Source: Haliotis cracherodii
Taxonomy: Eukaryota
Direction of reading: 5' to 3'
DNA: 64,000 nt
Assembly: GCF_022045235.1 (NCBI RefSeq)
Contig: NW_027266286.1
Coordinates: forward strand, 70,866,001 to 70,930,000
Shown: in pieces, positions 8,701-60,430 of the stretch
How the letters are laid out: every line of letters starts with the position of its first letter
Position numbering within the stretch: position 1 is the stretch's first letter
Made by a program: the position numbers and the translations under genes
Notes under the pieces: model-generated
Told to the model about the DNA's origin: nothing
What the model saw: only the letters and a program-made list of their open reading frames with translations
Database searches by the model: none

Positions 8701-8855
8701 NNNNNNNNNNNNNNNNNNNNNNNNNNNNNNNNNNNNNNNNNNNNNNNNNNNNNNNNNNNNNNNNNNNNNNNNNNNNNNNNNNNNNNNNNNNNNNNNNNNN
8801 NNNNNNNNNNNNNNNNNNNNNNNNNNNNNNNNNNNNNNNNNNNNNNNNNNNNNNN
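8701..8855. other. Assembly gap (155 N)
   Basis: Run of N. Confidence 1.
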
Positions 8856-32551: not shown

Positions 32552-35231
32552 ATGGGAAAGGTATATATCTATATCTTATTTATTTCTTATAAATGGCTTT
32601 TACCTTGAAATATATTTTAGACTGAACTCATTGAGAGAATTTATCTATGTGTAGAGTTCATATATCTAAGTGAAATGAATATGGTTATCTTCACTAAATT
32701 AATAATGCGTGATACCTTTACGTTAAAAGTAGCATTTTATCATTAAGAGTGAGTGAGTATGGTTTTATGCCGCTTTTAGCAATATTCCAGCATTATCACG
32801 GCGGTTATCATTTAGAAACGGCTGGCGATATTGTCATCAACACATTTTTATTTATAACAACTATTCAAAAAATAGTAATACTCAATGTTTAAAGGGTATG
32901 GTTCAAATTGGCCGTTTATTCTAGAACCTTTTGGACAAAAGGGACATCACAGCAATAAAATATCCCTTTTACTATGACATAAGTATAAGGGTGTGCTGTA
33001 CACTATACATAACATGGCCAGTTATAAGATGTAGTCTTTTGTCTTTCAGTGTATATACAGCATCGCAGCGATAGTTTGCCTCGTCGCCATGACGACGGCC
33101 CTTCCCCCTCTCCCAACTCCCGCCTGTTATTCCAAGCAACTTTCGTCTGACCAAAGCTTTGACCTCAGCTTTGTCTGCAATGACGGAAGACAATACCCTG
33201 AGTAAGTACATTTAGCAACGTAGCAAACAATTGACAGGACAGGTCGGTTTTATTTCGTTAGAAACGTCCTTTTTCGCTAGCGAAAATACCATTTGAATTT
33301 CCATATATATTAAATCAAATGAAAACGAGTCATATTTATACATAAGGCGTAAGTGCCAATAAGTCAAAATGTCGATATATATTCATTTTGTATGACATAA
33401 CATGTACGTTTGAGTCGAATTTATATGTTATAAGAGTTAATGTACCGTTAAGTCGAAGTGTCTGACATTTTCACTTTGGACTATATAACATGTACCTCTA
33501 AGTGGCATAACCGACGTGCGCTGATGAACCGTTAAGTCGAAATGTCTGACATATTCACTTTGGACTATATAACATGTACCTCTAAGTGGCATTACCGACA
33601 TGTGTTGATGTACGGTTAAGTCGAACTGTCTGACATTTTACTTTGTCTCCAGACAGGAGATCGAGGAGGCTCTGTACTACGCCGACGACCACTGGCGTAT
33701 CTACCTCAACCTGACATCCACCTGCTTCCAGGACCAGGACACCTACTTCTTGAACAAACAGTAAGTGACAAATCCGGAATAACGAATCTGGAATAGGGAG
33801 TAATGTCCCTATAGTTCATTTGATCGTCCACGATAAGCACGTCTTGAAAACTGGTTCACCATCCACTATCAATGACTTTCATTCGGGATGATTCATGAGA
33901 AACATACTGATAAAATGTAGAAAAAGAACATTAAAATATTGTGGTCTAATGTTCATTGCTCTATACACTGAAAAGCTCCATGTTAACCAAATAACGTTAC
34001 TGTTAAATGTTGTACGTTGTGTATTTAGTTCAATGCTTGTTTTCCTGGTATCCATACGAATTATCATGCCAGATATTCACTTCCCCTTTTAGCCATTCCC
34101 GTAGTTCTTTCCATAAGTATATTTGAGACCATGACATGTACAAATGAATTGCTGATGTTGGCCAATGTTACATTATTTAACATATATTGGCAAAAAGTAC
34201 ATTATTCAACATATACTGGCGAATGTTACATTATTCAACATATATTTGCGAATGTTACATTATTCAACATATATTGGCGAATGTTACATTATTCAACATA
34301 TATTTGCGAATGTTATATTATTCAACATATATTGGCGAATGTTACATTATTTACATATATTCTGGAAACGTTATTTATTTGACCTTGACCTTGCAGCTCT
34401 GAGCCCAACTACTACAAGTTGAAGAGCGTGTGCAACACCACTCGTACCATGGTGCACACCATCTATGCCAGGGACGGTCAAGTCTGCCACGTTGTCCGCC
34501 CTATGTCCCAGAAAGTCTTCTACGCCACATGCGGGTAGGTACACAGCTATGTTATTTTTAGAAAGTTCCTGTATGTTTCTACAACTCATAAAGATGTAAT
34601 AATGAAGACTAAAATTCTAAAACATGCAGACGCCAACAAAATCAAACAAATAATTCTTGGAGTAGTTTGAAATTGTTTTATAAATTTTTGTATTCAAAGG
34701 AAGCTTAAGCGAATCAAAACCCCTTGCGTATATTGTCCACATTCATATATACACACTTATTGTATAAAAATAAAGGTATAAAGGATAAAACCTTTTTGCG
34801 AAATAAAGGATTATCAACAGGGCAATAATGATAACAATCTACATATCGATACTTAATGACTTAAATATTACTTATTTACGTTATTAAATATGTATTGTTT
34901 GTTTTACAGAGGAGAATGTAACCTTGGTTACGACGGCGTGACCGGCTACCACTGCATTCAACGCGGCATCACCTACCGCAACTTCCTCGGTTACTGCCGT
35001 TTCCCCGACCCCGCAACCTTCCCAGAATCTTCCCCCATCTACGCTCTTGACCCCTCCGTCGACAACTTCTATGACCCCCGTGTTGCCCCACCAACCCACC
35101 GCATGCAGCACAACCTCCTCAAGAGCGGGGGCCACTACAAACCCAAGGGCTACTTCACGGAGTTGAGCGTTACCCTCCCCAGCTACTGCGGCTGCAGGGG
35201 ATATTTCTGCCCCCACGACAGGATTGTTTAG
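32552..35231 (+). CDS. Secreted Spaetzle/NGF-like cystine-knot protein, type A, copy A1 (242 aa)
   Basis: Exons 32552-32560, 33050-33201, 33653-33760, 34397-34534, 34910-35231, all GT-AG and in frame. Signal peptide MGKCIYSIAAIVCLVAMTTA; C..YP..I pro-region; SVC..QKVFYATC..GEC..HCIQ..LPSYCGC knot pattern; TATA at 32474; AATAAA near 35674. Confidence 0.85.
34160..34365. repeat. 29-bp intronic minisatellite (A1 intron 3); longer array at 45950-46270 in A2
   Basis: Unit AATGTTACATTATTCAACATATATTGGCG; ~7 copies in A1, ~11 in A2, one degenerate unit in A3. Confidence 0.9.
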
Positions 35232-36749
35232 ATGATGACTACGTTCTTTAAGGCACTGGTACGATTTGAACCTAGACTAGTGGACCAATGGACCAAAGTA
35301 AAACCAATTTTTTATACAAACATTTAATTTTTGATAAATGAAAACTATTTTTTTTTAACCAAAATACTTTACGATTTTTTAGCAATCTTTTCAACAAATT
35401 GGAAATTGCAAGTGTTATTTTGTTCACAGGTCACTGTTTTCAAATTATGCTTCTGTTAAACTTATAATTTTTTTTTGCACTTTTATACCACAATGTGATC
35501 TCGGTCTTAAGTTGGCAAATATGTTAATTGTAAATATTTTGCGAATTCCATGTAAATACATCCTACAGGATGTTGTGAATATGTATCTATATGTTCCATC
35601 TTTGTACAGTATAAACTGACATCACCATTACTTGTGCGCGCATGTATAATATGTACAGATAATAATATGTGAAAATAAAAGCAACATGAAAATATGTACT
35701 TTTTCTGTTTTGATGATTATTGCTTATTTTGGCCAATGAAACTTAAACATGAATATAGCTGCCTGATTTCACATTGGTCGAAGACACAGATGCATAATTA
35801 GAACTAAAGTGAGTGAACGTACGTACATACAACTGCTCTTCTCCAGACAATATGACAAGAGGGATGACTTAAAATTCCAAAAGTCAAATTTCAATTTGTG
35901 CCAAACGATATTCCTGCTCCAGCCTTTGGTGTCTGCAATTCACAACTTTTTTCGTTATAATCGAGCAGGTTCTTGCCACGAACATTTTAAAACAGCGTCA
36001 CACGTCTCCATACTCCATACAGCTGTCTGATCATGGTTACATCATTCAAAACCTCTGCAAAGCATTCAAAACGTTTTATATCAGATATGTGGAGGAACTC
36101 TACCAATTTGAAGCATCAGTGACAAAAATGATGTCAGATGCATTTCCCTGTTTTGACTTGAAACCATATGCTCCGTGTTTTTTGTTCAGGTGAGCCGTTA
36201 ACTTGCCTTTGCATGTGTTTATGACGCATGCCAGCGTTTTGGCAAGATACGCTCACCTTTTCCCGAACGCCTGATATCGTTACTATTTGATTCATAAACA
36301 CATGCTTTTGATGCAGTCGGGACCATACAAAAGGACTCACCTTTTAGTAAGGATTTATGTTTTTGTAAGTATTTGATAATACATTAAATCGGACAATTGT
36401 TAATCCAGGTGATGGTACAGATAATCTTACTGTCCAGATTAACGGTGTCGTTGGACATAAAAAGATATTTACGATTGACAAAAATGTAACTGATTTATTA
36501 AAATAGATCAACTCTGTAAAGACACGAATATTTTACCAACAATAACCAACTAACAGTTGCCTGTAAATATGCCAATCTAGAACACCTGAATTACACCAGT
36601 GGTAATGGTTCCGATATGATGGTGCTCTCAGATTGTAATTTTTCTTCTTTTCGTTATGAAATAATCACCCACGTCGCTTGCAGCTTCCATGCTTCCACGT
36701 CTATAAGTTCATGATAAAACAAAGACGATATCCTTACAGACGTTGTAGG

Positions 36750-37048
36750 GACTGCCTCCGTGGTCTGGTAGTAGAGCGTCCGCCCGGAGAGCGGAAGGTC
36801 CGGGGTTCGATCCCCGACCGCGTCAAACCAAAAGACGTTAAAAGATGGTACTTGTTGTTAAGTTGTCTGGCGCTCGGCATTAAGGCGCTAAAACAAGGAC
36901 TGGTCGGCTTGGAGTCAAAAGTGTCTGCACTATAAAACGGTCTCAGCCCGGACTAGTATAAACAGTCACACACACGTGCATGCACGTCGCTATATAAGTG
37001 CAATAATTTTGGACGTGACGGCAAACCACATTTCACCTCACCCACCTC
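36750..37048 (+). mobile_element. SINE family 3 (internally deleted; duplicated at 48711-49009)
   Basis: Same head and body; TSD CAGAC(G/A)TTGTA. Confidence 0.88.
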
Positions 37049-37289
37049 CAGACATTGTATCCATCGGACTCAAAGTCAAAGGTATTTATTGTATGTAAGG
37101 CCCCCGGCCCATATACAAAAGGGTTACAAATAAGTAGTTTTTACATATTTGGATATATACACATGTTTAACAATTTGTTTCTGAGGCAAATTGCATTTTT
37201 AACATATACAGCCTATTTTAATATGACAGCATCTTCTTTTGAAAAAAAAGAAGAGAAAAAACAGGTGCTGGATAATTTGACAGATAGCG

Positions 37290-38570
37290 TTCTGGTATAA
37301 ACTGGTTTCTTAGATCACAATAATAAGGGCACACAAAAGTAAAATGAATTAAATTTTATATAGCTGAATGACAGAATGGGCATCACCTCTTCGACTTTTC
37401 TTCCTTCATTTATCATGAGATCTAACAATCCGAGCCCAAATTGAATAAAAAGACGTAGAAGGGTTTCATTCTTTCATTCAGTGCCACCTGACCCCTTTTC
37501 TAAAATATGACAATATTTCTTTTATCATAGTTAACTGATTGATAATTTCCACTCTTTGGTGTAACATTCTAAAATGTTAAGCTGTTTTTGTAGTCAAACA
37601 ACAGAATTTGATACTAAAATGACATCATCGCAAAAAGAAGCAGCAAAATGTCTGTTACATCTAGGAACATGTGAAGACCAAGTTTACCCTTAGCAACAAT
37701 TTCATAATATAATTCATTAATAAAAAATAAGAACAATATCGGGCTGAAGATACATCCTTGTCCTAAGCCAACAGGACAGTCAAAGAAGTACACATGATAT
37801 ATTATTTGAATACATAGCTTTTAATGAAGAGTACATTTCCCCCTGAAGACCAGTAGTCCTTAAACAGTATCATAGTTTATAACGATCAACGGAGTCAAAA
37901 GCTTTTTTAAATCGACAAAGGCTACATACACATTGTGTTTACGACGTGATAGACATTTTTGGATAATTGCATGTAATGTGAATATAATATCTGACGTTGA
38001 GTATTTTTTCTAAAACCAGCTTGAGTTTCGGGAATCTTATCTCGCATGTTTGCCCAATTCGTAATCCTGGAATTAAGTACTGATGTAAAAATCTTTCCAA
38101 GAATACTCATTAAGGATATTCCCCTATAATTGTCAGGATTGTTAAAAAACTCCTTTCGTGTGTATTAGAATAATTACCGAACAAGACCAGCTTCTGGGAA
38201 ATATACCACTGTCAAACATCCTATTGAAACATTTTTGAAGAAAGGCCTCATCTCAAATTTGGTGACAATATGGTCAGGACCATCCATTTTCCACAGTTTA
38301 GATACATTATAGCGTCCAGAATTTCATCCTGTGATAGGTGATTCTAAAATATGTTTGTCAACAACAGTATAACATGAAGAGGAAATATCCATAATATCGT
38401 CAAAACACACATCACTGTCAGTGTTGAAAACAGTGTAATTTGAAAAAAAACCTTTCAAAAAAACGTATATGCCACTGAGCCTTTGAGATACTATCTATTC
38501 TATTTGTCTGCTTCTTAATGAACGTATTTGTTTCCAAAACTAAGGAGAATGGATTGTATCACTCAGTGTT
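37290..38570 (-). mobile_element. Decayed LINE reverse transcriptase fragment (duplicate at ~49260-50560)
   Basis: NYRGISLMSILGKIF, QAGFRK, VAFVDLKKAFD, GQGCILSPILF, LLFADD motifs across frameshifts. Confidence 0.85.
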
Positions 38571-39777
38571 TTAGCCTAAATTTTAAGTCAGATTTATATT
38601 TCCTACAGCAGAATTTGTTATGATTTCACCTTTTGCAGTACATGTTTTTATTAGAGTCAGTACGTCTACATCTAATTGTATAATTGTCGCAATTGTGTGA
38701 GTGACGTTAACGCCGCTTTGAACCACATTATTTTGGTAATATAACAACGAATCAGTTTTATTTTGGAGGAAAGCCCCAAAGTAGCTGAGTGATGAAATGA
38801 AACCAACGAGCACGTCTGTAGTGTTGACAGACAAGAGAACAATAATAAATTAACTAGCTGTTCTCTTCACGGTATAAGCTTTGTGTGTGTGTTGTCTAAC
38901 GCCGCACTCAGTAATAGTCAAGCTATGTGACGGTGGTCTGGAAAAAATCGAGTCTAGACCGAAATTGGGATACGATGACATGCATCGACTAAGTCAGCGG
39001 GCCTGACCACCCGATCCCGTTAGTCGCCTCTTCCGACAGGCATTGTCGCCTCTTACGACAAGCATGAGTTGCTGTCAGCGTACAGGCTGCTTTCAATGGG
39101 GAACTCCCGTGTGCCTGATTAGGATGCCAGTATCTCATGCTTGCAGTGCCTGCAGACTAAAATATGAGCTGGGTTCTTTTAGACTTCCCTCCATGTCGTT
39201 GGTAAGCTGAATTTAGACACTTGTGTTTTGAATAGTTTTCGAGTTGTATAAAGAGGCGACAAAAACCTTTTCGTTATCACACGACATCTCTGCTAAAAAC
39301 GGAGTCCATTGTATGATTCCGACTACCTAGTTCATAAAAAACGTGTTTATGAATCACTGTAAAATTGTGATGAACGGTCACTTTACACAAGCTACAGATG
39401 TTTACTTCTTAAAGCTTAAAAGCAGCCATCAATTCATAAAGGGCTTGGTATTTTTTGTTTTATGTAATAATGTAACAGGACTCTTTACAGAAGTTTATTT
39501 CAATAAATTACCTGTTTTGTGACGATTCCCAAAGGGACACCATGCTCCATTGTCTGTTGCCCATTTTCAATGACTGCAATAATATTTATGTGAGACATTG
39601 ACACATTGTGTCTGTGTAATGAGAATAGCTATTTGTTACTTGACTGATGGAAATAATAAAAAAAAATGTGCAGATGGGTATTGCATATTGCTCTAATGCA
39701 ATTCGGCCCAAATCTATACTCTCGTTAGGTTCAACGAACTACCTGGAAAGAATTGACAGCGAAACATGTTATCCACA

Positions 39778-40042
39778 TGTGCGTATGTGTGTGCGTATGT
39801 GTATGTGTATGTGTACGTGAATGCGTATGTCTATGCGTATGTGAATGGGTATGTGTATACGTATGTGTATGTGTATGACTATGTGAATGGGTATGTGTAT
39901 GCTAATGTGTACGTGAATGCGTATGTGTATGCGTATGTGTATGTGAATGTGTATGGGTAAACATATGTGTATGTGTATGCATATGTGTATGTGTATGTGT
40001 ATGTGTATGCGTATGTGTATTCGTATGTGTATGTGTATGCGT
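39778..40042. repeat. (TATGTG)n-type microsatellite (duplicate 51710-51932)
   Basis: Hexamer-periodic TG/TA-rich tract. Confidence 0.9.
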
Positions 40043-40419
40043 GGGCTTCGGGAAGAACTGTGTCATTCTATGTTCTCTTGTGTCGAGTGATTCAATTTAA
40101 TGCATAATATCATCATACTCTTTGAACTGATAGTTGTGAACACTTTGTAATTCTTGAACTTGATGTGTTGTTGTAAGAGATTTCGCTACATGTTTGGTAT
40201 AACTTTGATACAGGGTTCTAAAATAGCTCACCCATAATATAGATTACAAGGGGGATTTATATGTCTTATTTTCATGGTTATACCCATATTATGATTATCA
40301 AGGTAATATGTGAGGTAATCAGTCAACTGCCAGTTACCAGTGAGTTAAATGACCCACTACATGCCAGAACGAGTGATGCATGTCAACGTATCCCTTTTGC
40401 GTAGTCCCACAACTCTCGC

Positions 40420-41010
40420 TGATACAGAGATATAGCACAACAAGGAAACGTTGTATTATCTTTAGCTAGCATCCCAATGGGCACCAACTGTGCTCCCCTT
40501 CTGCTGGCCTGTTTCTTTATGCACATGAGTCGGGATTTCTGCTCAGATTGGCAAAAGTCAAAACAAGATAATTTGGCCAAGATGTTTAACCTAGGCTTAC
40601 CGATGGTCTGATATCGTTCAATAACTATCAAATAGCCAATTCACTTCCTCTGACGTACCCACCTGAACTACAAAATTAGGAGACCAGTGAGACCGCCTCA
40701 TCTGTTTCATGTTTAAATCTATGGACAAAGAATCAGAGTGACGAAACACTCTCCACAAGACTGTATGACAAGAGGGATGACATCATTTTTCCAAAAGTCA
40801 ACTTTCCATTCATGTCAAGGAGCTCCTCCCTTTAGTGTCCACAATTCACAACTTTTGAGATACAATCGAGCATACCAAGATTACAAACATCATCGTGCGA
40901 CTCTTGCTCCGAGGTTGTTTGATCATGCTTACAAAGGTTTATGGTAGACATGAGGAGGAAATCTCCAAATGTGACGCATCGGCGACAAAAATATGACGTC
41001 CGATGCTTTT
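40420..41010 (+). mobile_element. Penelope-like RT fragment (duplicate ~52320-52950)
   Basis: IPMGTNCAPLL, IDDL, YPPEL, YDKRDD, SQLLRYNRA motifs. Related 3' fragments near 28640-28980, 35830-36340, 47800-48300, 57470-57650. Confidence 0.65.
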
Positions 41011-41137
41011 ATTTATTGTGAACAGGGATGTTGGTGGATGTCAATGTTCACTGAGGCCATGTGACGTAACATGGAAAGTCTCCTTTCGGTTTGTTTTATA
41101 TTGTATAAACCATTTACAATAAAAAACACCGAAAAAG

Positions 41138-41226
41138 AGTGTGTGAGTAAATATGGTTTTACGCCGCTTTTAGCACTATTCTAGCCATATCACGGCGGGG
41201 GACCCTAGAAATGGGCTTCACACATT
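41138..41226 (-). mobile_element. SINE family 1, 5'-truncated (duplicate at 53126-53216; fragment at 32748-32803)
   Basis: 3' half only. Confidence 0.75.
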
Positions 41227-41589
41227 ACACTATAAAGGAAAATTCACAAGTATTATTCAGAGAGATTTATTATTACACAAAGTTGGCAACACAAAAAAAC
41301 AAAACGTTATGTACAATATAAACAAACTATTTACATGTGCGAGCATGATATATATTTACAAATGATAATATATAATGGTAAAACAAATAATGTCACAAAT
41401 ACTTCAAAATCAATACGATTAAAAGTATTTTTGTAAGGTCGAAATAAACCAAGTTCACAAAACATTGTCCTTCTTGTTCTCAAGTGTTCCTCATATAAAC
41501 AAATAAATGTTTGTATTTGGCGTGACGTTGAGTCCCACTATTACACATGCGTAAAAGTACGACTTCGCAGAGGGAGTGTAAACCATGGT

Positions 41590-43902: not shown

Positions 43903-44487
43903 ATTTACACACAAAGGACCAATCTATGTTTAAATAGTTACTGTAGCTGTGTACAGCGATGGCTGACTTGCTTGGGCCTTTCGCTCGCTTTTATTCCCTC
44001 TCACCTCGGAAGGAGGAGCACATTTCAGCCAATCAGAAGTGGCGTTTTTGATTGAATGACCCTGACGTCACGGCAACACTTCTTCCTGAAAACAATGGCG
44101 GCAGTGGATGATGTACCTACGTCACAGATCATAACAAGGAGATTTAAAGATAACAACCTCTCTCTTATACATTCATGGTGTTCCAGGGCCACTTAAGCCT
44201 CTTGCCCATCAATCAGAATGACAGAGTGAGAGAACGTGACAATATATATATACATACAGATGACGCCAGTTATAACTAGATACATATAAATGACGACAGT
44301 TGTGACAAGATTGACGTTGTACAACAATTTATTAAGAGATAAAAATTGACGTCACAGAATTTGAAGGACAACTGTCACGTGACAAGAGAGACAGGGCACG
44401 AGTCGAGAGTATATAAGAAGACATTGGCCCAGTCTGAGCCAGCGACTGTGAACACCTCACGAACCGAGCTTCACACATCATCCTACC
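43903..44487. promoter_or_regulatory. Bidirectional promoter between B1 and A2
   Basis: 585 bp between ATGs. TATATAA 44410 (+); AATAAAAG TATA-like near 43990 (-); CCAAT near 44029; CRE palindromes TGACGTCA at 44063 and 44347; YY1-like AATGGCGGC near 44094; E-box palindrome TGTCACGTGACA 44373-44384. Confidence 0.7.
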
Positions 44488-50100: not shown

Positions 50101-53100
50101 AATTGTCAGGATTGTTAAAAAAAACTCCTTTCGTGAGTATTAGAATAATTACCGAACAAGACCAGCTTCTGGGAAATATACCACTGTCAAACATCCTATT
50201 GAAACATTTTGGAAGAAAAGGCCTCATCTCAAATTTGGAACATTTTATCATTTCAGTAACAATATGGTCAGGACCAGCAGCTTCCCACAGTTTAGATGTA
50301 CTATAGCGTCCAGAATTCCATCCTGTGATAGGTGATTCTAAAATATGTTTGTCAACAACAGTATAATATGAAGAGGAAATATCCATAATATCGTCAAACA
50401 CAACACTGTCAGTGTTGAAAACAGTGTAATTTGAAAAAAAACTTTCATAAAATGTATATGCCACTGAGCCTTTGAGATACTATCTATTCTATTTGTCTGC
50501 TTCTTAATGAACGTATTTGTTTCCAAATCTAAGAAGGAGAATGGATAGTGTCACTCAGTGTATAAGCCTAAATTTACACAAGTCAGATTTATATTTCCTC
50601 CAGCAGAATTTGAATTGATTTCTCTTTTTGCAGTACATGTTTTTATTAGAGTCAGTACGTCTACATCTAATTGTATAATTGTCGCAATTTGAACTACGTT
50701 AATTCAGTAATATAACAACGAATCAGCTTAATATTGGAGGAAATCCCCAAAGTAGCTGAGTGATGAAATGAAACCAACGAGCACGTCTGTAGTGTTGACA
50801 GACAAGAGAACAATATTAAATTAACTAGCTGTTCTCTTCACAGTATAAGCTTTGTTTGTTTGTTGTCTAACGCCGCGCTCAATAATAGTCAAGCTATGTG
50901 TCGGCGGTCTGGAAAAAAACGAGCCTAGACCGAAATTGGGAGCGAGCCTGACCACCCGATCTAGTTAGTGGCCTCTTACGACAAGCATAGTCGCCTTTTA
51001 CGGCAAGAATGAGTTGCTGTCAGCGTACAAGCTGCTTTCAATGGGGAGCTCCCGTGTGCCTGATTAGGATGCCAGTTTCTCATGCTTGCACTGCCTGCCG
51101 ACTAAAATATGATCTGTGTTCTTTTAGACTTTTCTCCATGTCGTGTGTAAGCTGAATTTAGACACTCGTGTTTTGAATAGTTTTCTTGTTGTATACAGAG
51201 GCGACAAAAAACTTTTCGTAATCACGCGACATCTCTGCTAAAAACGGAGTCCATTGTATGATTCCGACTACCTAATATATAAGAAACATGTGTTTATGAA
51301 TCCCTGTAAAATTGTGATGAACGGTCACTTTACACAAGCTACAGATGCTTACTTCTTAAAAGCAGCCATCAATTCATAAAGGGCTTGGTATTTTTTGTTT
51401 TATGTAATAAAATCACAGGACACTTTACAGAAGTTAATTTCAATAAATTACCTGTTTTGTGACGGTTCCCGAAGGGACACCATGCTCCATTGTCTGTTGC
51501 CCGTTTTCAATGACTGCAATAATATTAATGTGAGACATTGACACATTGTGTCTGTGTAATGAGAATAACTATTTGTTACTTGACTGATCGAAATTAAAAA
51601 AACTTCAATGTGCAGATGGGTATTGCATATTGCTTTAATGCAATTTGGCCCAAATCTATACTCTCTTTAGGTTCCACGAACTACCTAGAAAGAATTGACA
51701 TGAGCCACATGTGCGTATTTGTGTGTGTATGCGTATGTGTATGCGTATGTGTATGCGTATGTTTACGTGAATGCGTATGTGAATGGGTATGTGTATACGT
51801 ATGTGTATGTGTATGACTATGTGAATGCTAATGTGTATGCTAATGTGTACGTGAATGCGTATGTGTATGCGTATGTGTATGTGTATGTGAATGCATATGT
51901 GTATTCGTATGTGTATGTGTATGTGTATGCGTGGGCTTCGGGAAGAACTGTGTCATTCTATGTTCTCTTGTGTCGAGTGATTCAATTTGTATGCATAATA
52001 TCATCATTCTCTTTGAACTGATAGTTTTGAACACTTTGTAATTCTTGAACCTGAAGTGTTGTTGTAAGAGATTGCGCAACATGTTTGGTATAACTTAGAT
52101 ACAGGGTTCTAAAATAGCTCACCCATAATATAGATTACAAGGGGGATTTATATGTCTTATTTTCATGGTTATACCTATATTATCATTATCAAGGTAATAT
52201 GTGAAGTAATAAGTCAACTGCCAATTACCAGTGAGTTAAATGACCCACTACATGCCAGAACGAGTGATGCCTGTCAACGTATCGCTTTTGCGTAGTCCCA
52301 CAACTCCCGCTGATACAGAGATATAGCACAACAAGGAAACGTTGTATTATCTTTAGCTAGCATCCCCATGGGCACCAACTGTGCTCCCCTTCTTGCTGGC
52401 CTGTTTCTTTACGCACATGAGTCGGGATTTCTTTTCACATTGGCAAAAGTCAAAACAAGGTAATTTGGCTAAGATGTTTAACCTGGGCTTCATGTGTATC
52501 GATGATCTGATAACGTTCAATAACCATCAAATAGCCAATTCACTTCCTCTGACGTACCCACCTGAACTACAAATTTAGGAGACCAGTGAGACAGCCTCAT
52601 CTGTTTCATGTTTAAATCTATGGACAAAGAATCAGAGTGACAAAACACTCTCCACAAGACTGTATGACAAGAGGGATGACATCAACTTTCCAAAAGTCCA
52701 CTTCCCCCCCTTCATGTCGAGCAGCACCCTCCCCCCCTTGGTATCTACAATTCTCAACTTTTGAGATACAATCGAGCACGCTCTTTCTACCAAACATCAT
52801 CGTACGACTCTTGCCTAGAAGTTGTTTGATCAAGGGTACAGCCTAATGAGGAGGACATTTCCAAATGTGACGCATCGGTGACAAAAACATGAGATCCGAT
52901 GCAGTTCCATATTTTGATTTGTACCATATGATCCCGTGTTTTTTCAGAGATTTCCTATCAATACGGAAAGGATTTTTTTAGCTTTTATTTATTTGGAACA
53001 GGGATGTTGGTGGATGTCAGTGTACAGTGAGGCCATGTGACGTAACATGGAAAGTCTACTTGTTCATATTGTTTTTGTCACTAGGCAAACAACAAGTTTG

Positions 53101-53577
53101 CTTTCGGTTTGTTTTATATTGTATAGAGTGAGTGAGTGAGTATGGTTTTATGCCGCTTTTAGCACTATTCCAGCCATATCACGACGGGGGACCCTAGAAA
53201 TGGGCTTCACACATTACACCATAAAAGAAAATACACAAGTATTATTCAGAGAAATTTATTATTACACAAAGTTGGCAACACAAAAAAAACAAAACGTTAT
53301 GTACAATATAAACAAACTATTTACATGTGCGAGCATGATATATTTACAAATGATAATATATAATGGTAAAACAAATAATGTCACAAATACTTCAAAATCA
53401 ATACGATTAAAAGTATTTTTGTAAGGTCGAAATAAACCAAGTTCACAAAACATTGTCCTTCTTGTTCTCAAGTGTTCCTCATATAAACGAATAAATGTTT
53501 GTATTTGGCGTGACGTTGAGTCCCACTATTACACATGCGTAAAAGTACGACTTCGCAGAGGGAGTGTAAACCATGGT

Positions 53578-55732
53578 TTACACAAACTGATACTTGAGAC
53601 ATTCGTATTTCTTACAGCTGCATCCGGTGGGGATGGTGACGCGGGTTCTGCGGCACTGCTTGATCTCGCCGGGACAGAAGACGTAGATATCACGTTCAAC
53701 CATGCCGTCGGGGACGCAGTAGTGGTGTTTCACCTCCGTGGTGTCCATGACGCAGTGACCTCTGGAGAAAAGAGATGATGGTGAATATTGTGTAATAATA
53801 CTTTCTTGTACAAGCCTCAAATGTAATATCGACGTGTACATTATTAAAAGACCTTTTAACATTTTTGAATTGTGCGACTCAGAATCAGACCAAACTAAGA
53901 TTGAAGACGTATGTTGCGCATATTGTTTATTAATACCTGTTATTCCCAAAATTAGAAACATAAGACCCATGTTACCCCAAACCACCATGAACTTGAAGGA
54001 AACCGTTTATCATGAATACTAGCATATGAAAGCTGGACATGTTTGGTCAAGCTAATTGTGTGACGTACCCGCATTGAGCGACTTCAACTCCCTGGGCTTC
54101 AGGCATGATGACGTAGCAGACCTCTCGGCGCCCGTTCTGGGTGTTGGTCCACCAGATTCTCTCCAGGAGCTCGGTGTTCTCGGAACACAGATCCTTGTAT
54201 CGGTAGGCGGGGTAGTGGCTGGAATAAACCACAAGCATGGTTCAAACAGCTATAGTGCAATAATTATAGCATTGCGTTCTTGAAGAAATGTCTGTGCGGC
54301 TGGAGTTTAACGCCGCGTTTCAGCAATAGTCCAACCTACGGTGGAGTGAACCAGGCATGGGATTGACACAGTCGAACTTGGTTTCTGAGAGTGAGTGAAC
54401 GTTTAACAACAAGTCTACTCCATCGCCCTCTATACAATTGAGTCGTGTGAAACATGGAGATGACATCACTGATCCGTTTGTCTCGTCATATAAATTGATA
54501 ATATTGTCACGTCATAAACAAGGTAAAAGACTGTTTTACATAGGTAAATTAATTGTTTTATGTAATAATCACAACTGGTGGTATGACACATGTGATAGTA
54601 CTCGAGTGATTTAGTAGGACACAAGATCAAATTGAGTTGGGTGAGTCAGTGCGCTGAATTTGGGAAAGCTACAGGTAACCTTCTAACACGTGTAAAAGTG
54701 ACCTTCACCTATTGAGTGAGTCAGTTGCCTATTGAACAGTATTTCAGATATATTGCAACGGGACAGCTTAATGTGGGAGGTGAAATGACGATGAAACGGG
54801 TGATGACTAGTAGCTAGGGTGGATCATCTGTACCTACCCGGTGGAGTTCATCTTGTTGTGGAGGTAGCATCCCTGCACCAGCAGCATGTACTCCATTGCG
54901 TCGGGATCCTGTTCCAGGGCACTGAACACACGGTCACTGGAACAAACACGTTAACATTATTGTCAGCCTTCTCATACACTATGGTGTACAGACAACAGTA
55001 GAACTTACAGTGTGAACACACGGTCATTGGAACAACTAATAACGCATCTTTGCAATTTCACAACATAGCTTCTTAAAATTACAAAAGACACGGGGGACAG
55101 AACCCGAGCCATACAGATCTGACAAACGATGGCATTTACAACTTGGCCGTTCCGCCTTACTGCCTGAACTTAATTTACCACATAAATGAAAATAAAGCAT
55201 ACTTCGGATATATATAAATAATATAAAATAATTATTTTCCTGTTTGTTGTTTTCCTCAAATATTTATGCATACATTTTAAGGGAAAGACAACATCAAAGC
55301 ATATTTCTAGATAAAATACATACACAGGGTATTTGTAGGACTTGTCGAAGCACAGCTTTTCCTTGGTAGGCCATTCGTACTGGGGGACGCCATTCTTGTC
55401 AAAGTAGCAGATTGGCTGTTTGGTTTTGGCGGAGAGGGCGCTGAAGATGCTGGAACCGTCACGGACGCGGGCACCAAACAAGGAAGACTTTCTGGATTTC
55501 AGGAGGCTAGCGAATCGGCTGGAGGTTGAGCCTCCCAGAGAACGCCCTCCGACAGGGGGTCGATTCCACGCCAAGGTGACGGCGGTGAGGGACATGAGAA
55601 CGCATAATGTCACAAGAACTCTCTGGAAGAAATGAGAGATGGGGATTTTCATTTAAACTACTCTGCACATAAATAAACTGTATATCAAGACATTATCATC
55701 GTACACAGTTAGCAAAATATTCTACTTACCAT
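53578..55732 (-). CDS. Secreted cystine-knot protein, type B, copy B2 (244 aa)
   Basis: Exons 55732-55730, 55622-55324, 54936-54838, 54218-54069, 53761-53578. Near-identical to B1; intron 1 is 107 nt versus 293 nt in B1. Confidence 0.85.
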
Positions 55733-56319
55733 ATTTGCAAACAAAGGACCAATCTATGTTAAAATAGTTACTGTAGCTGTGTACAGCGATGGCTGACTTG
55801 CTGGGGCCTTTCGCTCGCTTTTATTCCCTCTCACCTCGGAAGGAGGAGCACATTTCAGCCAATCAGAAGTGGCGTTTTTGATCGAATGACCCTGACGTCA
55901 GACGGCAACACTTCTTCCTGAAAACAATGGCGGCAGTGGATTACGTACCTGCGTCACAGATCATAACAAGGAGATTTAAAGATGACAACCTCTCTCTTAT
56001 ACATTCACGGTGTTCCAAGGCCACTTAAGCCTCTTGCCCATCAATCAGAATGACAGAGTGAGAGAACATGACAATATATATATACATACAGATGACGCCA
56101 GTTATAATTAGATACATATAAATGACGACAGTTGTGACAAGATTGACGTTGTACAATAATGTATTGAGAGATAGAAATTGACGTCACAGAATTTGATGGA
56201 CAACTGTCACGTGACAAGAGAGACAGGGCACGAGTCGAGAGTATATAAGGAGACACTGGCCCACTCTGAGCCAGCGACTGTGAACACCTCACGAACCGAG
56301 CTTCACACATCATCCTACC
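55733..56319. promoter_or_regulatory. Bidirectional promoter between B2 and A3
   Basis: Near-identical copy of 43903-44487 with the same CRE, CCAAT, E-box and TATA motifs. Confidence 0.7.
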
Positions 56320-59082
56320 ATGGGAAAGGTATATATCTATATCTGATTTATTTCTTAGAAATGGTTTATATGTTGAAATATATTTCAAAATGAATTGATT
56401 GAAAGCATTTAGCTGTGTATAAAGTTGCATATTGCTTATTGAAATGAATATGGTTAGCCTTTATCTTCTTTTTTTCTCTCACGAAAATGGTGTTTTAATG
56501 TGTGCACTTCGACCGTTACGTTAATGGTAGCATTTTCTGTTTAGTGGTGCTATTGTGACAAACACATATTTAGGTATATCTTCAGAGCTAATGTTCCGTA
56601 GGTAGTAATACTCAATGTTTAAGATTTTTGTTCAACTGTTCCGTTTATTCTAGAACCTTATGGATCATAAAAACACCAGAGAAATTGAATTGTTCTTTCA
56701 TTACCCCTTTATACTCAAATATAACCAATTACAAAATGTGATCTTTGTTTTCCAGTTCACCTACTATATCGCGGCGTTAGTCGGCCTCGTCGCCATGACG
56801 ACGGCCCTCCCCCATCTCCCCACTCCCGCCTGCTATTCCCAGCAACTTCTGTCGGACCAGAGCTTTGACCTCAGCTTTGTCTGCAACGACGGAAGACAAT
56901 ATCCCGAGTAAGTACATTGAGCTACTTCGGAAACAATGTACAGGGCAGGTTGTTTGTGTTTCGTTTGAAAAGCCTTCTTAAGTTTGCCGTTTGCTGTATG
57001 AATTTTCACAAATATATAAAATCAAAGTAAAATGAGTCATAAATGAATTGTATTTAAGTCGAACTGTCTTTGAATGACACACCATGTACCTTTAAGTCGA
57101 ATTAATGACATGCGTTGATGTTATAAGAGTTTTTGCACCGTTAAGTCGAAATGTCAGACATATTCACTTTGGACTATATAACATGCACCTCTAAGTGGCA
57201 TAACCGACATGCGTTGGTGTACCGTTAAGTCGGACTGTCTGACATTTTACTTTGTCTCCAGACAGGAGATCGAGGAGGCTCTGTACTACGCCGACGACCA
57301 CTGGCGTATCTACCTCAACCTGACATCCACCTGCTTCCAGGACCAGGACACCTACTTCATGAACAAACAGTAAGTAGCGCCGCACACTAGATCTACTTTG
57401 AAATAAAGCAACAAAACCCTCCCCAATAATCGAACGAAATGTCCATTGTCCTTTGCACGATTAGGACAATATCATGAGCATGTGTTTATGAATCAATATA
57501 CAAAAAAGTAATGATACCAGATGCTGGCGACACAGTGAGCGTTTCCTGCACTTGTGGAACCCGTCACAAACACATGCAAAGACATCTCAATTGTTTACCT
57601 GAAAATATGCGAATATATTGTATTGATCAAAACAGGTAATTGCATCGATCGTCAATTTTTACCCCTTTAATCCGGACGCGTCGCTTCCAATGAAATAGCC
57701 CGGGATAACGATACTTGAGTTGGGAGTAATGTCTCACTGGTTGTATGTCATTCACAAGAATAAAGTCCTGAAATCGGGGTTCCGGATTAACAGGGGTTCA
57801 CTATCTATTATCAACGACGTTCTTATATATTTTCATCCTAGGGAGTGCTTTATGTTAAATATACTGAAGAAATGTAGATAGGAAACACATTAAAACATCG
57901 TAAAATAATGTTCATTGCTCTATTCAGAGAAATGCTTCAGATGAAAGAAAATAACCGTACTGTGTTAAATGTTGGTACCTGGTTATTTCGTTCATTACCG
58001 AATGATACCTGGTTTTCCTGGTATCCATACGACTTTTGACAATACCAAACACATACTTCCCCCAGTTTATTTGAGGCTTGACATATACAAATTAAAACTG
58101 GTATTTGTGAATGTTACTATATTCTACATATATTCTGGAATCGCTATCATTCATTGACTTTGTCCTTGCAGCTCTGAGCCCAACTACTACAAGTTGAAGA
58201 GCGTGTGCAACACCACTCGTACCATGGTGCACACCATCTATGCCATGGACGGTCAAGTCTGCCACGTTGTCCGCCCTATGTCCCAGAAAGTCTTCTACGC
58301 CACATGCGGGTAGGTACACAGCTATGTTTTTAACAAGCAGTTCATTATACATACTAAAATTCATAACTAAGCAGTTGGTTATAATTAATATATTTTTAGT
58401 GATATGTCAACGACAAAGGCTTGATTATACAAAACGCAGGCTCCTACGAAGTCAAACAAATAAACGTTGGAGTAGTTTGACTGCATATTTATATTTTTGA
58501 AAAAGATTTTATATCTTAATATTCAAATGAAGCGAATCAAAAACCCTTGCATTCATTGTACACATTCATATATACACATTTATTGTCTATAAAGAAAGTT
58601 TAGCTGTTCAAATACTCATGTGAAATTAAGAATTGTTAAAAGGACATTCATAATAGCAATCTACATATCGACACTCTAAGACTAATTACAAGACTTATCA
58701 TTAAAATAGTATTTATCCATTACATCTCGCTTTACTAAATATGCCCTGTTTGTTTTACAGAGGAGAATGTAACCTTGGTTACGACGGCGTGACCGGCTAT
58801 CACTGCATTCAACGCGGAATCACCTACCGCAACTTCCTCGGTTACTGCCGTCTCCCCGACCCCGCAACCTTCCCAGAATCTGATCCCATCTACGCTCTTG
58901 ACCCCTCCGTCGACAACTTCTACGACCCCCGTGTTGCCCCTCCAACCCACCGCATGCAGCACAACCTCCTCCAGAGCGGTGGCCACTACAAACCCAAGGG
59001 CTACTTCACGGAGTTGAGCGTTACCCTCCCCAGCTACTGCGGCTGCAGGGGATATTTCTGCCCCCACGACAGGATTGTTTAG
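56320..59082 (+). CDS. Secreted cystine-knot protein, type A, copy A3 (242 aa)
   Basis: Exons 56320-56328, 56756-56907, 57262-57369, 58172-58309, 58761-59082; intact frame. Introns 3 and 4 are diverged from A1/A2 while exons are nearly identical. Confidence 0.85.
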
Positions 59083-60430
59083 ATGATGACTACGTTCATT
59101 AAGGGACTGATACAAAATGAACAAAGACCAGTTGAAGCCAGTTGTTTTCCACAAGCATTTTATTTAAATAAGTGAAAACTATTTTTAAAGAACCAAACTC
59201 TTTCTGATTTTTAGAAGCCTTTTCAAGTAAATGGAAATTACAAATGTTATTTGGTTTACACTTCACTTTTTTCAAATCATTTCAGACTTACCTTTATTTT
59301 TTCCTCACTTTTATACCAAAATGTAATCTCGGTATGAAGTTGGCAAATATGTTAATTGTAAATATTTTGCGAATTCCATGTAAATATGTACTATAGGATG
59401 TTGTGAATATGTATTTTATATGTTCCATCTTTATACAGTTTAAACTGACATCATCATTGCTTGTGCGCGCATGTATAATATGTACAGATATTAATATGTG
59501 AAAATAAAAGCAACATGAAAATATGTACTGTTTCTGTTTTGATGATTATTGTTTAGTTTGGACAATATAAATGTATTTCAGTAATATATAAATTATATAT
59601 TTATCATATAATGGGTAGGTTTCTTGGCAGGATAAAGACAACGGATAAAAACGATATCCGTTGGGGTCATATGCGGAAAGAGATGCAAATATCAAAGGTC
59701 AAGTAGGGACTACTTTCAGTGTTTATAAACAAACATGGCGTCGCCCTTGTCATTTGGCAATCGAGTCAGAATTAACCATCGGGAATCTGGATAAACTACA
59801 GAGATAATTGCTATAATAATCAAAAGAACAGTCTAATATACATAAAATCAGTGTCTAGCTGTGACGTAGTAAGGCATTTTATAAGTTTTGGCAACTTTGG
59901 AGATATAAATTTCGAAACAATTTTGCGAGGGCACTAGGCCTAGCCAAGCGGTATCAGTAGCAATATCTGTGCTTGTGGACCTCTGCGGCTTGAAACCTTT
60001 TCCACAAATAAAAATAGTTGGATTTGGCAGAAATATGTTTGAATTTTTACCTTGTTTCGTTTTGTCGCTGTGTGTACATCTGATTGCACTTTGTAACGTT
60101 ATGACAGGACAGTCTTATAGACTAGGGTTAGAGTAGCTTCCCTTTGACAAAGGGCAGTTACTCTAGCGGCCAGACCGATGGATTCCCGCGAAATGCAAGT
60201 AAATAACAATTGTTGTTTTGCGTATATGTTGCTTCGCCACTGTATAAGAAACAGATTTCAGTTGGAACTATATTGGCAACTGTCACTGTCCGACTGACAC
60301 ATCACTTACCCTTTGACGTAATAAATATTATTGCGCTCTTTCCAGGAAAACTCGCAATGTTTAGGTAATGTTTGTGAGAGAGTGAAAGAGATTTTCAAGT
60401 ACAGATTAAAGAATGACAGTTTATGATAAA

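What the first reader, a model, noticed from the sequence alone, without database searches (positions are those of the whole stretch)
32552..59082. Cluster of two uncharacterised paralogous Spaetzle-like secreted cystine-knot proteins arranged as head-to-head pairs
Seen: types A and B share little sequence identity but have the same five-exon plan, with introns at homologous positions (phase 2 after YP-x; phase 2 after TGC GG), signal peptides and 12 alignable cysteines (e.g. A VCHVVRPMSQKVFYATCGGEC vs B VCYVIMPEAQGVEVAQCGGHC; A VTLPSYCGCRGYFC vs B VTIPTGCSCKKYEC). Established: the C..YP..I pro-region and C-x-Q-x-V-x-C..C..C..P-x-x-C-x-C spacing recall the Spaetzle/neurotrophin/coagulogen fold; heterodimeric cystine-knot hormones (GPA2/GPB5) are encoded by linked paralogues. 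Inference: a co-expressed two-subunit ligand or secreted structural/clotting system, possibly a Toll-receptor ligand in a lineage where such ligands are poorly defined. The ORF track shows only fragments.
Basis: partly seen in the sequence, partly recalled or inferred. Interest (0 to 1): 0.86.

Follow-up and report, generated by a model that had tools for sequence, protein, structure and literature searches.

The report
Abalone orphan cystine-knot gene array
The black abalone genome carries four alternating copies of two anciently diverged genes for secreted cystine-knot proteins; they belong to a mollusc-only family that nobody has described, the fold is confirmed, and the function and the "Spaetzle" label remain unproven.

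Summary
The window is Haliotis cracherodii chromosome DNA. An 11.9-kb tandem unit carries gene A (+ strand, five exons, 242 aa) and gene B (- strand, about 245 aa). The full array is A1> <B1 A2> <B2 A3> <B3 A4> <B4, and it runs about 20 kb past the window.

- **Gene models.** My exon models equal RefSeq "uncharacterized protein" models. The three internal introns are phase 2 at matching positions in A and B.
- **Homology.** A and B are homologous (hhalign 98.1%, E 9e-14). Twelve cysteines align, and B has a 13th.
- **Selection.** All copies are intact (pN/pS 0.06-0.37).
- **Fold.** AlphaFold2 models of both have a cystine-knot growth-factor fold with an N-terminal helical domain.
- **Structure matches.** The best matches are coagulogen (Z 5.8-6.7), Noggin, IL-17, NGF and sclerostin. 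Spaetzle itself scores only Z 2.6-3.0.
- **Family membership.** No Pfam family reaches its cut-off (Sclerostin 0.03, Spaetzle 0.15). Language-model look-alikes are Spaetzle, NGF and Noggin clusters.
- **Range.** Only 16 representative clusters match, and every named one is a gastropod or bivalve protein without a known function.
- **A:B pairing.** The complex test gave weak support (0.50 against 0.08 for the best control).

So this is an undescribed cystine-knot family. It is not a demonstrable Spaetzle, and the heterodimer idea is unproven. The scan had not found this family on other DNA.

The parts
32552..35231 (+). Gene A1. CDS exons 32552-32560, 33050-33201, 33653-33760, 34397-34534, 34910-35231. 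Product = P0047 (XP_071115463.1), 242 aa.
   Evidence: GT-AG at every junction and a 729-nt frame. The exon translations equal P0047.
41590..44176 (-). Gene B1. CDS exons 44176-44171 ('MN' mini-exon), 43606-43308, 42934-42836, 42238-42089, 41773-41590. Product = P0001 (XP_071114960.1), 245 aa.
   Evidence: The ATG at the MKIPIS site is CTG in this copy.
44177..44487 (.). Divergent intergenic region between the B1 and A2 start codons, 311 bp. It holds TATATAA at 44410 (78 nt before the A2 ATG), a T/A run at about 44244-44256 facing B1, the palindrome TGACGTCA at 44347, and five TGACG motifs.
   Evidence: five TGACG against 0.68 expected, Poisson P about 7e-4. The copies are duplicates, so they are not independent. 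Promoter function is inferred, not shown.
44488..47135 (+). Gene A2. CDS exons 44488-44496, 44940-45091, 45446-45553, 46300-46437, 46814-47135. Product = P0044 (XP_071112281.1), 242 aa.
53578..55652 (-). Gene B2. CDS 55652-55324 (starts MKIPISHFFQ), 54936-54838, 54218-54069, 53761-53578. Product = P0011 (XP_071114961.1), 253 aa.
   Evidence: The upstream mini-exon ATG is GTG in this copy.
55653..56319 (.). Divergent intergenic region between the B2 and A3 start codons, 667 bp. It has the same TATA box and TGACG cluster (56093-56182, TATATAA at 56242).
56320..59082 (+). Gene A3. CDS exons 56320-56328, 56756-56907, 57262-57369, 58172-58309, 58761-59082. Product = P0049 (XP_071112282.1), 242 aa.
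33011..59566 (.). Tandem array of an 11.9-kb unit: unit 1 about 33011-44901, unit 2 about 44902-56767, unit 3 from 56768. The array runs on beyond the window to B3, A4 and B4.
   Evidence: Self-BLAST and exon mapping on the extended sequence.
49557..49754 (-). Decayed reverse-transcriptase fragment in the A-B tail-to-tail spacer. Its copy in unit 1 is at 37617-37793. It belongs to the repeat unit, not to the genes.
   Evidence: Pfam RVT_1, E 6.7e-7 and 0.0046.

Best explanation
The locus is a tandem array of four alternating copies of two anciently diverged paralogous genes, A and B. Both belong to an undescribed family of secreted proteins that has so far been found only in gastropods and bivalves.

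Each protein has three parts:
- a signal peptide;
- an N-terminal helical domain carrying three conserved Cys and a W...C...YP...IExAL motif;
- a C-terminal cystine-knot growth-factor domain, with a ring from C-x3-C plus C-x-C, a threading disulfide, and extra disulfides.

I infer that they act outside the cell as disulfide-stabilised, probably dimeric, ligands or ligand-binding proteins. I also infer that neighbouring B and A genes are transcribed divergently from a short shared control region. The four-fold amplification with purifying selection suggests that a high or balanced dose of both products matters.

Shown here: the gene structures, the homology of A and B, the intact copies under selection, the predicted fold, and the restricted taxonomic range. 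Inferred: secretion, dimerisation, co-regulation and any receptor. An A-B heteromer is possible (about 0.3) but not established.
For: - **Gene models.** They equal RefSeq models.
- **Copy number.** Four A and four B copies, strictly alternating, occur only at this locus in the 1.18-Gb genome.
- **Selection.** pN/pS among copies is 0.06-0.37.
- **Conservation.** B is 88-91% identical across four Haliotis species, with a nearly invariant C-terminal half.
- **Homology of A and B.** hhalign gives 98.1%, E 9e-14.
- **Models.** For B, mean pLDDT is 72.9, with most ten-residue blocks between 81 and 240 at 81-95 and two at 68-71. For A, mean pLDDT is 67.2, with most core blocks at 72-87.
- **Structure searches.** Nearly all hits (36 of 37 rows for B) are cystine-knot proteins. 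VIA-align gives coagulogen Z 5.8 (132 residues aligned) for B and Z 6.7 (130) for A; Noggin 4.4 and 5.1; IL-17A 5.8 and 4.1; NGF 4.4 and 4.5; sclerostin 4.5 and 4.3. Foldseek ranks sclerostin first for B (E 3.7e-3) and coagulogen first for A (E 0.043).
- **Disulfide evidence.** C188 and C234 are lost together in the Mytilus and Mizuhopecten members. This is the pairing expected between the second Cys of C-x3-C and the second Cys of C-x-C. C125 and C142 are mutually exclusive across the family.
- **Language-model look-alikes.** Spaetzle, NGF and Noggin clusters score 0.89-0.93.
- **Family range.** There are 16 representative clusters at E<=1e-3 among 1.84 billion proteins. Every named one is a mollusc protein called uncharacterized or hypothetical.
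- **Age of the split.** A groups with a Solemya protein (support 97/94), and B groups with Gigantopelta and Patella proteins.
- **Promoter region.** The divergent start codons are 311-880 bp apart, with a shared TATA box and TGACG cluster.
- **A:B complex.** Score 0.50 against a best control of 0.08, verdict 'weak support'. The runs agree in at least 69% of contacts and the partner pLDDT is at least 72. The mark was reached by 51 of 78 solved complexes and 2 of 108 mismatched pairs, but a score of 0.60 or under was seen in only 5 of those 78 and in all 4 mismatches that passed.
Against: - Expression, co-expression and tissue are therefore unknown. The 6- and 9-nt first coding exons in the RefSeq models imply transcript support, but that is only an inference.
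- All structural Z scores are 'middling' (below 8), and the Foldseek E-values are above 1e-3.
- No family HMM is significant.
- B has 13 Cys in the mature protein and A has 12. B's odd Cys (C221) therefore has no counterpart in A, which argues against a covalent A-B dimer.
- The complex test cannot separate A:B from A:A or B:B.
- The four B copies have different annotated 5' ends, so a shared bidirectional promoter is not proven.
- Apparent absence from oysters, cephalopods and heterobranch snails may reflect the limits of search sensitivity.
Confidence: 0.6

Rival explanations
1. A and B are true, very divergent Spaetzle/neurotrophin-family cytokines. On this reading they are Toll or neurotrophin-receptor ligands, made as pro-proteins and activated by proteolysis.
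For: - Language-model look-alikes are led by a mollusc cluster in which 15% of members carry PF16077, and by arthropod Spaetzle clusters (0.92-0.93, 188-199 shared features). NGF clusters follow.
- Coagulogen, a structural relative of NGF and Spaetzle, is the top structural match.
- From my own reading of the sequences: the Q-x6-C motif before the second knot Cys, and the 11-residue spacing between C188 and C200, equal those I recall for NGF.
Against: - PF16077 reaches E 0.15 in only one of 29 members, and PF00243 gives nothing.
- The family profile hits no Spaetzle, NGF or coagulogen chain in the PDB at E<=10, yet it hits sclerostin at 0.065.
- The Spaetzle structure 3e07 scores Z 2.6-3.0 and 7b1c scores Z 2.0.
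- The ring is C-x3-C in most members (8-membered), not the longer Spaetzle/NGF ring.
- No conserved Arg or Lys cleavage site lies between the helical domain and the knot.
- The N-terminal domain carries three conserved Cys.
Confidence: 0.15
2. They are secreted antagonists or modulators of BMP or Wnt signalling. On this reading they work like DAN-family proteins (sclerostin, gremlin) or Noggin, which bind ligands or co-receptors rather than signalling themselves.
For: - The best sequence-profile match is sclerostin (E 0.065), over 'yCvPDg..r.vlvfCPe....r.v.vP.sCsCKk'.
- The Pfam Sclerostin and DAN models are the top sub-threshold families (0.01-0.07).
- Foldseek ranks sclerostin first for B.
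- Gremlin, NBL1 and Norrin appear among the VIA matches.
- Noggin is second for A (Z 5.1, 117 residues, including the helical part) and is the first language-model hit for A.
- A and B carry a C-x-G-x-C ring motif, and the 13-residue C200-C214 spacing equals the spacing in sclerostin.
Against: - None of these matches is significant.
- The ring spacing varies from 3 to 16 residues across the family.
- Developmental antagonists are usually single-copy genes. Here there are four near-identical copies of each gene, and multi-copy sets occur in Sinanodonta, Mytilus and Dreissena.
Confidence: 0.15
3. They are abundant extracellular effector or structural proteins rather than signals. Candidates are a coagulogen-like clottable haemolymph protein, or a mucus or shell-matrix component, with the gene amplification serving bulk production.
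For: - Coagulogen is the only match that aligns over nearly its whole chain (residues 1-175, 130-132 aligned), helical part included. It is the top match for A in both searches and ties for top with B.
- The four-fold amplification under purifying selection, and multi-copy sets in several bivalves, fit a demand for dose.
- A carries a 39-residue disordered Pro-rich loop.
- B carries a 50-residue disordered Ser/Gly/basic N-terminal stretch.
Against: - Z 5.8-6.7 with 11-15% identity is not evidence of kinship.
- The Pfam Coagulin model gives nothing.
- There are no coagulogen-like cleavage sites.
- No paper in the library holds these sequences or accession numbers.
Confidence: 0.15
4. The array is an assembly artefact (collapsed or duplicated haplotypes), or a set of decaying pseudogenes.
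For: - The copies are 88-98% identical.
- A2 is a mosaic of A3-like 5' and A1-like 3' sequence.
- The B copies differ in their start codons.
Against: - All eight copies keep open frames and splice sites, with pN/pS of 0.06-0.37 and synonymous divergence up to 0.13.
- Multi-copy A and B genes are also annotated in H. rufescens, H. rubra and H. asinina.
Confidence: 0.03

Closest known systems
Coagulogen of horseshoe crabs (PDB 1aoc)
   Same: It is the best structural match to A and ties for best with B: Z 6.7 over 130 residues for A and Z 5.8 over 132 residues for B, spanning the whole 175-residue chain. It shares the plan of a helical N-terminal part packed on a C-terminal cystine knot, and it is also a secreted, Cys-rich protein.
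   Different: - Identity is 11-15%, and there is no HMM match.
- The Cys number differs (from memory, coagulogen has 16; here there are 12-13).
- No sites resembling clotting-enzyme cleavage sites are seen.
- It is an arthropod protein, and no clotting function is known for these mollusc proteins.
Spaetzle / neurotrophins (Pfam PF16077, PF00243)
   Same: Both have the cystine-knot cytokine fold. They are the nearest language-model clusters (0.89-0.93). NGF scores Z 4.4-4.5. The spacing around the second to fourth knot Cys is similar.
   Different: - The Pfam models are not matched.
- Spaetzle structures rank low (Z 2.0-3.0).
- The ring is shorter (C-x3-C).
- The knot domain has ten Cys where, from memory, Spaetzle has seven.
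- No activation cleavage site is seen.
- The N-terminal domain is folded and carries Cys.
DAN family: sclerostin, gremlin (Pfam PF05463, PF03045)
   Same: It gives the best sequence-profile similarity (E 0.065) over the second finger and the C-x-C. A and B carry the C-x-G-x-C ring motif. An extra Cys pair sits in the position of the finger-linking disulfide. The Foldseek top hit for B is sclerostin.
   Different: - The match is below every significance threshold.
- The loop between the ring and the fourth knot Cys is short (11 residues against 24).
- These proteins have an extra N-terminal helical domain.
- The ring length varies across the family.
Noggin (Pfam PF05806)
   Same: It has an N-terminal helical part plus a C-terminal cystine knot. 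It scores Z 5.1 (117 residues) for A and Z 4.4 (115 residues) for B. It is the first language-model hit for A.
   Different: There is no HMM match, identity is 10-11%, and Noggin genes are not known as tandem arrays of two alternating paralogues.
Heterodimeric cystine-knot hormones (GPA2/GPB5, bursicon)
   Same: These have two paralogous cystine-knot subunits.
   Different: - GPA2/GPB5 (8enb) scores only Z 2.5-2.6.
- Those hormones are, to my knowledge, single-copy genes.
- Here the heteromer has only weak computational support, and the Cys parity does not favour a covalent pair.

Membership tests
Cystine-knot growth-factor/cytokine superfamily (fold level) | Two long beta-hairpin fingers joined by a knot of three disulfides, with C-x(n)-C and C-x-C forming the ring. 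| tested here: met
   - AF2 models of both A and B show long paired strands (B 193-213 with 221-236; A 149-166 with 216-233).
- For B, 36 of 37 listed VIA rows are cystine-knot proteins, and most rows for A are too.
- C184-x3-C188 and C232-x-C234 are conserved.
- C188 and C234 are lost together in three lineages.
Spaetzle (Pfam PF16077) | A match to the family HMM over its gathering score (27 bits). | tested here: not met
   - The best result is E 0.15, in one of 29 family members.
- Nothing was found for the single exons or for P0001.
- A genome-wide six-frame scan gives no hit on the cluster.
Spaetzle (Pfam PF16077) | A pro-domain removed at a conserved basic site just before a knot domain of about 106 aa. 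That domain has, from memory, seven Cys: three knot pairs and one interchain Cys. | tested here: not met
   - No conserved Arg or Lys lies between the helical domain and C146 in the family alignment.
- The knot domain has ten Cys.
- The N-terminal domain has three conserved Cys and a pLDDT of 91-95.
Spaetzle (Pfam PF16077) | Binds and activates a Toll receptor. | not testable with these tools
   This needs binding or reporter assays.
Neurotrophin (Pfam PF00243) | An HMM match, and close structural similarity to NGF. | tested here: not met
   No PF00243 match at E<=1. NGF 1sg1 scores Z 4.4-4.5 at 16-17% identity, tied with unrelated knot families.
Coagulogen (Pfam PF02035 Coagulin) | An HMM match, and clotting-enzyme cleavage sites flanking a helical peptide C. 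| tested here: not met
   The family was not among the matches at E<=1-10. The structural match is top-ranked, but Z is only 5.8-6.7 at 11-15% identity. No conserved cleavage sites are seen.
DAN / sclerostin (Pfam PF03045, PF05463) | An HMM match over the cut-off, and an eight-Cys pattern with a C-x-G-x-C ring. | tested here: inconclusive
   - Sclerostin scores 16 bits, E 0.01, against a cut-off of 27. Across the family the best values are Sclerostin 0.03 and DAN 0.069.
- The PDB profile search gives E 0.065.
- C-G-G-x-C is present in A and B, but the spacing varies from 3 to 16 residues in the family.
Interleukin-17 (Pfam PF06083) | An HMM match, and a knot with only two disulfides. | tested here: not met
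   No PF06083 match. IL-17A scores Z 5.8 for B and 4.1 for A. A and B keep all six knot Cys.
Noggin (Pfam PF05806) | An HMM match. | tested here: not met
   No match. There is only structural similarity (Z 4.4-5.1) and language-model similarity (0.89-0.91).

The most novel reading that the evidence does not exclude
A and B are the two subunits of a mollusc-specific heteromeric cystine-knot ligand. On this reading they are kept at a strict 1:1 gene dose and co-transcribed from divergent promoters. The ligand would represent a new branch of the Spaetzle/NGF/coagulogen/Noggin group with its own receptor, for instance one of the many orphan mollusc Toll-like receptors.
Probability: 0.15. Interest if true: 0.75.

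Novelty: new variant of a known kind. Interest (0 to 1): 0.5.

Why it matters
Molluscs have large sets of Toll-like and other orphan receptors but few defined protein ligands. A conserved, secreted cystine-knot family that is restricted to molluscs and often multi-copy is a concrete candidate for such a ligand, for a ligand antagonist, or for a clotting or matrix protein.

The abalone array offers a clean test case. It has two paralogues that split before gastropods and bivalves diverged. They are held in strict alternation, and all eight copies are under purifying selection.

The family has no Pfam model and no paper that I could find. Naming it and finding where it is expressed would be new. 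Black abalone is also an endangered species hit by withering syndrome, so any immune role would have practical interest. Without expression or binding data, however, this remains a well-defined orphan family rather than a discovery of function.

Tried and rejected
- **Pfam.** The eight single exons, searched by reference, gave nothing useful. The full-length B proteins gave nothing.
- **PDB sequence search with P0001.** It returned only chance rows.
- **PF16077 scan of the whole genome.** No hit on the cluster and none over the cut-off.
- **Papers.** I searched for six accession or LOC numbers, five sequence motifs and two sets of topic words. No paper describes these proteins.
- **The look-up of encoding contigs.** Synteny in other species therefore rests only on neighbouring accession and LOC numbers on shared contigs.
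- **Complex prediction A:B.** 'Weak support', 0.50 against a best control of 0.08. It does not separate hetero- from homodimers.
- **Joined spliced models.** Exons were searched one by one by reference, and the full-length sequences used are database proteins that the tools returned.
- **Rejected: IL-17-like.** This was my early guess. There is no PF06083 match, and all six knot Cys are present.
- **Rejected: pseudogenes or assembly artefact.**
- **Considered from memory only: Lymnaea CRNF.** No heterobranch relative appeared in the searches, so I dropped it.
- **N runs.** The N runs at 8701-8855 and 18778-18908 were left alone.

Full report
**Origin and layout**

The window is Haliotis cracherodii (black abalone), contig C23:70866001-70930000 of a 1.18-Gb assembly. 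Self-comparison shows an 11.9-kb tandem unit. Unit 1 runs from about 33011 to 44901, unit 2 from about 44902 to 56767, and unit 3 starts at 56768. Block identities range from 77% to 98%, most of them 88-98%.

Mapping the exon peptides on the window plus 20 kb fetched downstream (L001, L002) gives a strictly alternating array: A1> <B1 A2> <B2 A3> <B3 A4> <B4. Six-frame searches of the whole genome find four copies of each gene, all at this locus, and no other close paralogue.

**Gene models**

Each A copy has five coding exons of 9, 152, 108, 138 and 322 nt, 729 nt in all. Every intron has GT-AG, and the intron phases are 0, 2, 2, 2. The exon translations equal the RefSeq proteins XP_071115463.1 (A1), XP_071112281.1 (A2) and XP_071112282.1 (A3). 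This includes the three codons that are split by introns.

B has exons of 299, 99, 150 and 184 nt, with all three introns in phase 2. B1 equals XP_071114960.1, whose first two residues, 'MN', come from a 6-nt mini-exon at 44176-44171.

The 5' ends of the B copies differ:
- B2, B3 and B4 keep an in-frame ATG (MKIPxSHFFQ) directly before the exon-2 acceptor.
- In B1 that ATG is CTG.
- In B2 the mini-exon ATG is GTG.
- B3 and B4 lack the mini-exon motif.

Exons were searched singly by reference, and every full-length sequence used is a database protein that a tool returned.

**Are A and B related, and are they alive?**

Exons 4 and 5 align well above shuffled controls (z 8.7 and 4.5) and above non-corresponding exon pairs. 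Exons 2 and 3 do not. A profile of the A proteins against a profile of the B-like proteins gives 98.1% probability, E 9e-14, over 140 columns at 23% identity.

Twelve Cys columns are shared, and B has a 13th Cys (C221) that A lacks. Among the copies pN/pS is 0.06-0.37, with synonymous divergence up to 0.13. B is 88-91% identical between H. cracherodii, H. rubra and H. asinina, with an almost invariant C-terminal half. These are working genes, not decaying duplicates.

**The family**

A full HMMER scan of 1.84 billion representative proteins with B found only 16 clusters at E<=1e-3. A profile search that also carried the A exons as separate rows found the full-length A proteins.

Every named member is a mollusc protein called 'uncharacterized' or 'hypothetical':
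- Gastropods: Haliotis (four species), Gigantopelta, Patella.
- Bivalves: Solemya, Sinanodonta, Potamilus, Mytilus, Mizuhopecten, Dreissena, Mercenaria, Mya.

Several species have multi-copy sets. In a maximum-likelihood tree the Haliotis A proteins group with one Solemya protein (support 97/94). B groups with the Gigantopelta and Patella proteins (92/91, 93/89). This suggests that A and B split before gastropods and bivalves diverged, although the branches are long.

The family consensus is: signal peptide, C...W...C...YP...IExAL (helical), then C...C-x-V-V-x-P-x2-Q-x6-C-x3-C...Y-C-V-P-D-G...R...V-F-C-P...Q-C...P-x2-C-S-C-K-x3-C.

**Fold**

No Pfam family is significant. The best values are Sclerostin 0.01-0.03, DAN 0.069 and Spaetzle 0.15, the last in a single member. 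The family profile against PDB sequences hits only sclerostin (E 0.065) and, more weakly, gremlin.

AlphaFold2 with the 29-sequence alignment gives the following:
- For B, mean pLDDT is 72.9. Most ten-residue blocks between 81 and 240 score 81-95, and two blocks (121-140) score 68-71. Residues 19-72 are disordered.
- For A, mean pLDDT is 67.2. Most core blocks score 72-87, and there is a disordered 39-residue Pro-rich loop at 170-208.
- Both models have N-terminal helices followed by long paired strands.

In the search that does not depend on Foldseek, nearly all hits are cystine-knot proteins:

| Match | B (Z; residues aligned) | A (Z; residues aligned) |
|---|---|---|
| Coagulogen | 5.8; 132 | 6.7; 130 |
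| IL-17A | 5.8 | 4.1 |
| Noggin | 4.4; 115 | 5.1; 117 |
| NGF | 4.4 | 4.5 |
| Sclerostin | 4.5 | 4.3 |
| Gremlin | 4.3 | 3.9 |
| Spaetzle (3e07) | 2.6 | 3.0 |

Foldseek ranks sclerostin first for B (E 3.7e-3) and coagulogen first for A (E 0.043). All of these scores are middling. The fold is secure because one fold fills the hit lists. The sub-family is not secure.

Two patterns in the alignment support knot-type pairing. First, the Mytilus and Mizuhopecten members lose C188 and C234 together. Second, C125 and C142 are mutually exclusive across the family.

Language-model look-alikes point to a mollusc cluster with some Spaetzle annotation, and then to Spaetzle, NGF, Noggin and PTTH-like clusters, at 0.87-0.93. 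That first cluster may be the family's own cluster.

**What it is not shown to be**

Spaetzle membership fails the tests that could be run:
- no HMM match, either in the proteins or in a genome-wide scan;
- a low structural rank;
- no conserved cleavage site before the knot;
- a folded, Cys-bearing N-terminal domain;
- ten rather than (from memory) seven Cys in the knot domain.

DAN/sclerostin-like and Noggin-like affinities are equally open.

**How it may work**

Shown here: secretory-type N-termini (by inspection), a cystine-knot fold, conservation, a strict 1:1 array, and short divergent intergenic regions. These are 311 bp between the B1 and A2 start codons, and about 670-880 bp for the other pairs.

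Each A gene has TATATAA 78 nt before its ATG. The B1/A2 spacer holds a TGACGTCA palindrome and five TGACG motifs against 0.68 expected.

Inferred: the products are extracellular, disulfide-locked and probably dimeric proteins, and neighbouring B and A genes are co-regulated.

B's odd Cys count suggests an intermolecular disulfide or a free thiol. A lacks that Cys, which argues against a covalent A-B link. The complex test for A:B gave weak support. The score was 0.50 against a best control of 0.08, the runs agreed in at least 69% of contacts, and the partner pLDDT was at least 72. The mark was reached by 51 of 78 solved complexes and 2 of 108 mismatched pairs, but scores of 0.60 or under are more often wrong than right. 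The test also cannot tell A:B from A:A or B:B.

Four near-identical copies of each gene, and multi-copy sets in bivalves, fit a product needed in quantity, such as an immune, clotting, mucus or matrix protein. They fit a classical hormone less well.

**Limits**

- No paper in the library mentions these proteins.
My data agree with it.

**Verdict**

This is an undescribed, mollusc-restricted branch of the cystine-knot superfamily, arranged as an alternating two-gene array. It is moderately interesting, and its function is open.

Noticed in passing
window 44488-47135, compared with 32552-35231 and 56320-59082: A2 is a mosaic. Its 5' part (signal peptide, exon 2 and upstream DNA) is A3-like: 96% identity to unit 3 against 77% to unit 1. 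Its exons 3-5 are A1-like: 96-98% identity to unit 1 against 88% to unit 3.
   Followed up: partly
window 43624-43818: Unit 1 has about 195 bp that unit 2 lacks, just upstream of B1 exon 2. It includes a Leu/Gln-rich simple repeat. Nearby, B1 has CTG where B2-B4 have the MKIPxSHFFQ start codon, so B1 depends on the upstream 'MN' mini-exon.
   Followed up: partly
L001/L002 (C23:70930001-70950000); RefSeq models P0004 and P0009: Two RefSeq B models (presumably B3 and B4; I did not map them) carry long odd N-terminal extensions before the signal peptide: a Ser/Arg-rich stretch, and IIYDDVSA repeats. These would bury the signal peptide and look like mis-joined upstream exons. The in-frame MKIPVSHFFQ start is present in both B3 and B4.
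   Followed up: partly
window 37617-37793 (-) and 49557-49754 (-): A decayed reverse-transcriptase fragment (Pfam RVT_1, E 0.0046 and 6.7e-7) lies in the A-B tail-to-tail spacer of both units. The retroelement was therefore inserted before the unit was duplicated.
   Followed up: yes
window 39750-40070 and 51700-51950: Long (CA/TG)n-type microsatellites lie in the spacer of each unit. They produce spurious Cys/Val/Tyr-rich ORFs.
   Followed up: no
window 44241-44390 (also 56093-56182 and, on L001/L002, extended coordinates 70358-70417): The divergent spacers hold a cluster of TGACG motifs, including a perfect TGACGTCA palindrome (CRE-like) and a CACGTG E-box. This hints at control by bZIP (CREB/ATF-type) factors. 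There are five motifs in 311 bp against 0.68 expected.
   Followed up: partly
proteins P0001 (residues 22-72), P0016, P0018, P0021, P0022, P0024: A short motif of the type S-x-F-[AGS]-S-L recurs in disordered tails. It occurs three times in the N-terminal stretch of Haliotis B (SRFASLL, SSLFGAR, SSIFSAL). It sits at the N-terminus in Gigantopelta and at the C-terminus in Mytilus and Mizuhopecten proteins. Its meaning is unknown; it could be a sorting or matrix-binding tag, or a peptide that is released.
   Followed up: no
window 62065-63114, 1781-2506, 5605-6469: Three minisatellite-like tandem arrays, one with a period of about 50 bp (95-97% identity), one of about 31 bp (about 90%), and one less regular (about 81%). 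They are unrelated to the finding.
   Followed up: no
window 36678-36935 and 48579-48896 (+): An ORF with the motif 'VVERPPGERKVRGSIPDRVKPKDVK' occurs once per unit. From memory it resembles the ORF-like read-through of a mollusc tRNA-derived SINE. Pfam gives nothing significant.
   Followed up: partly
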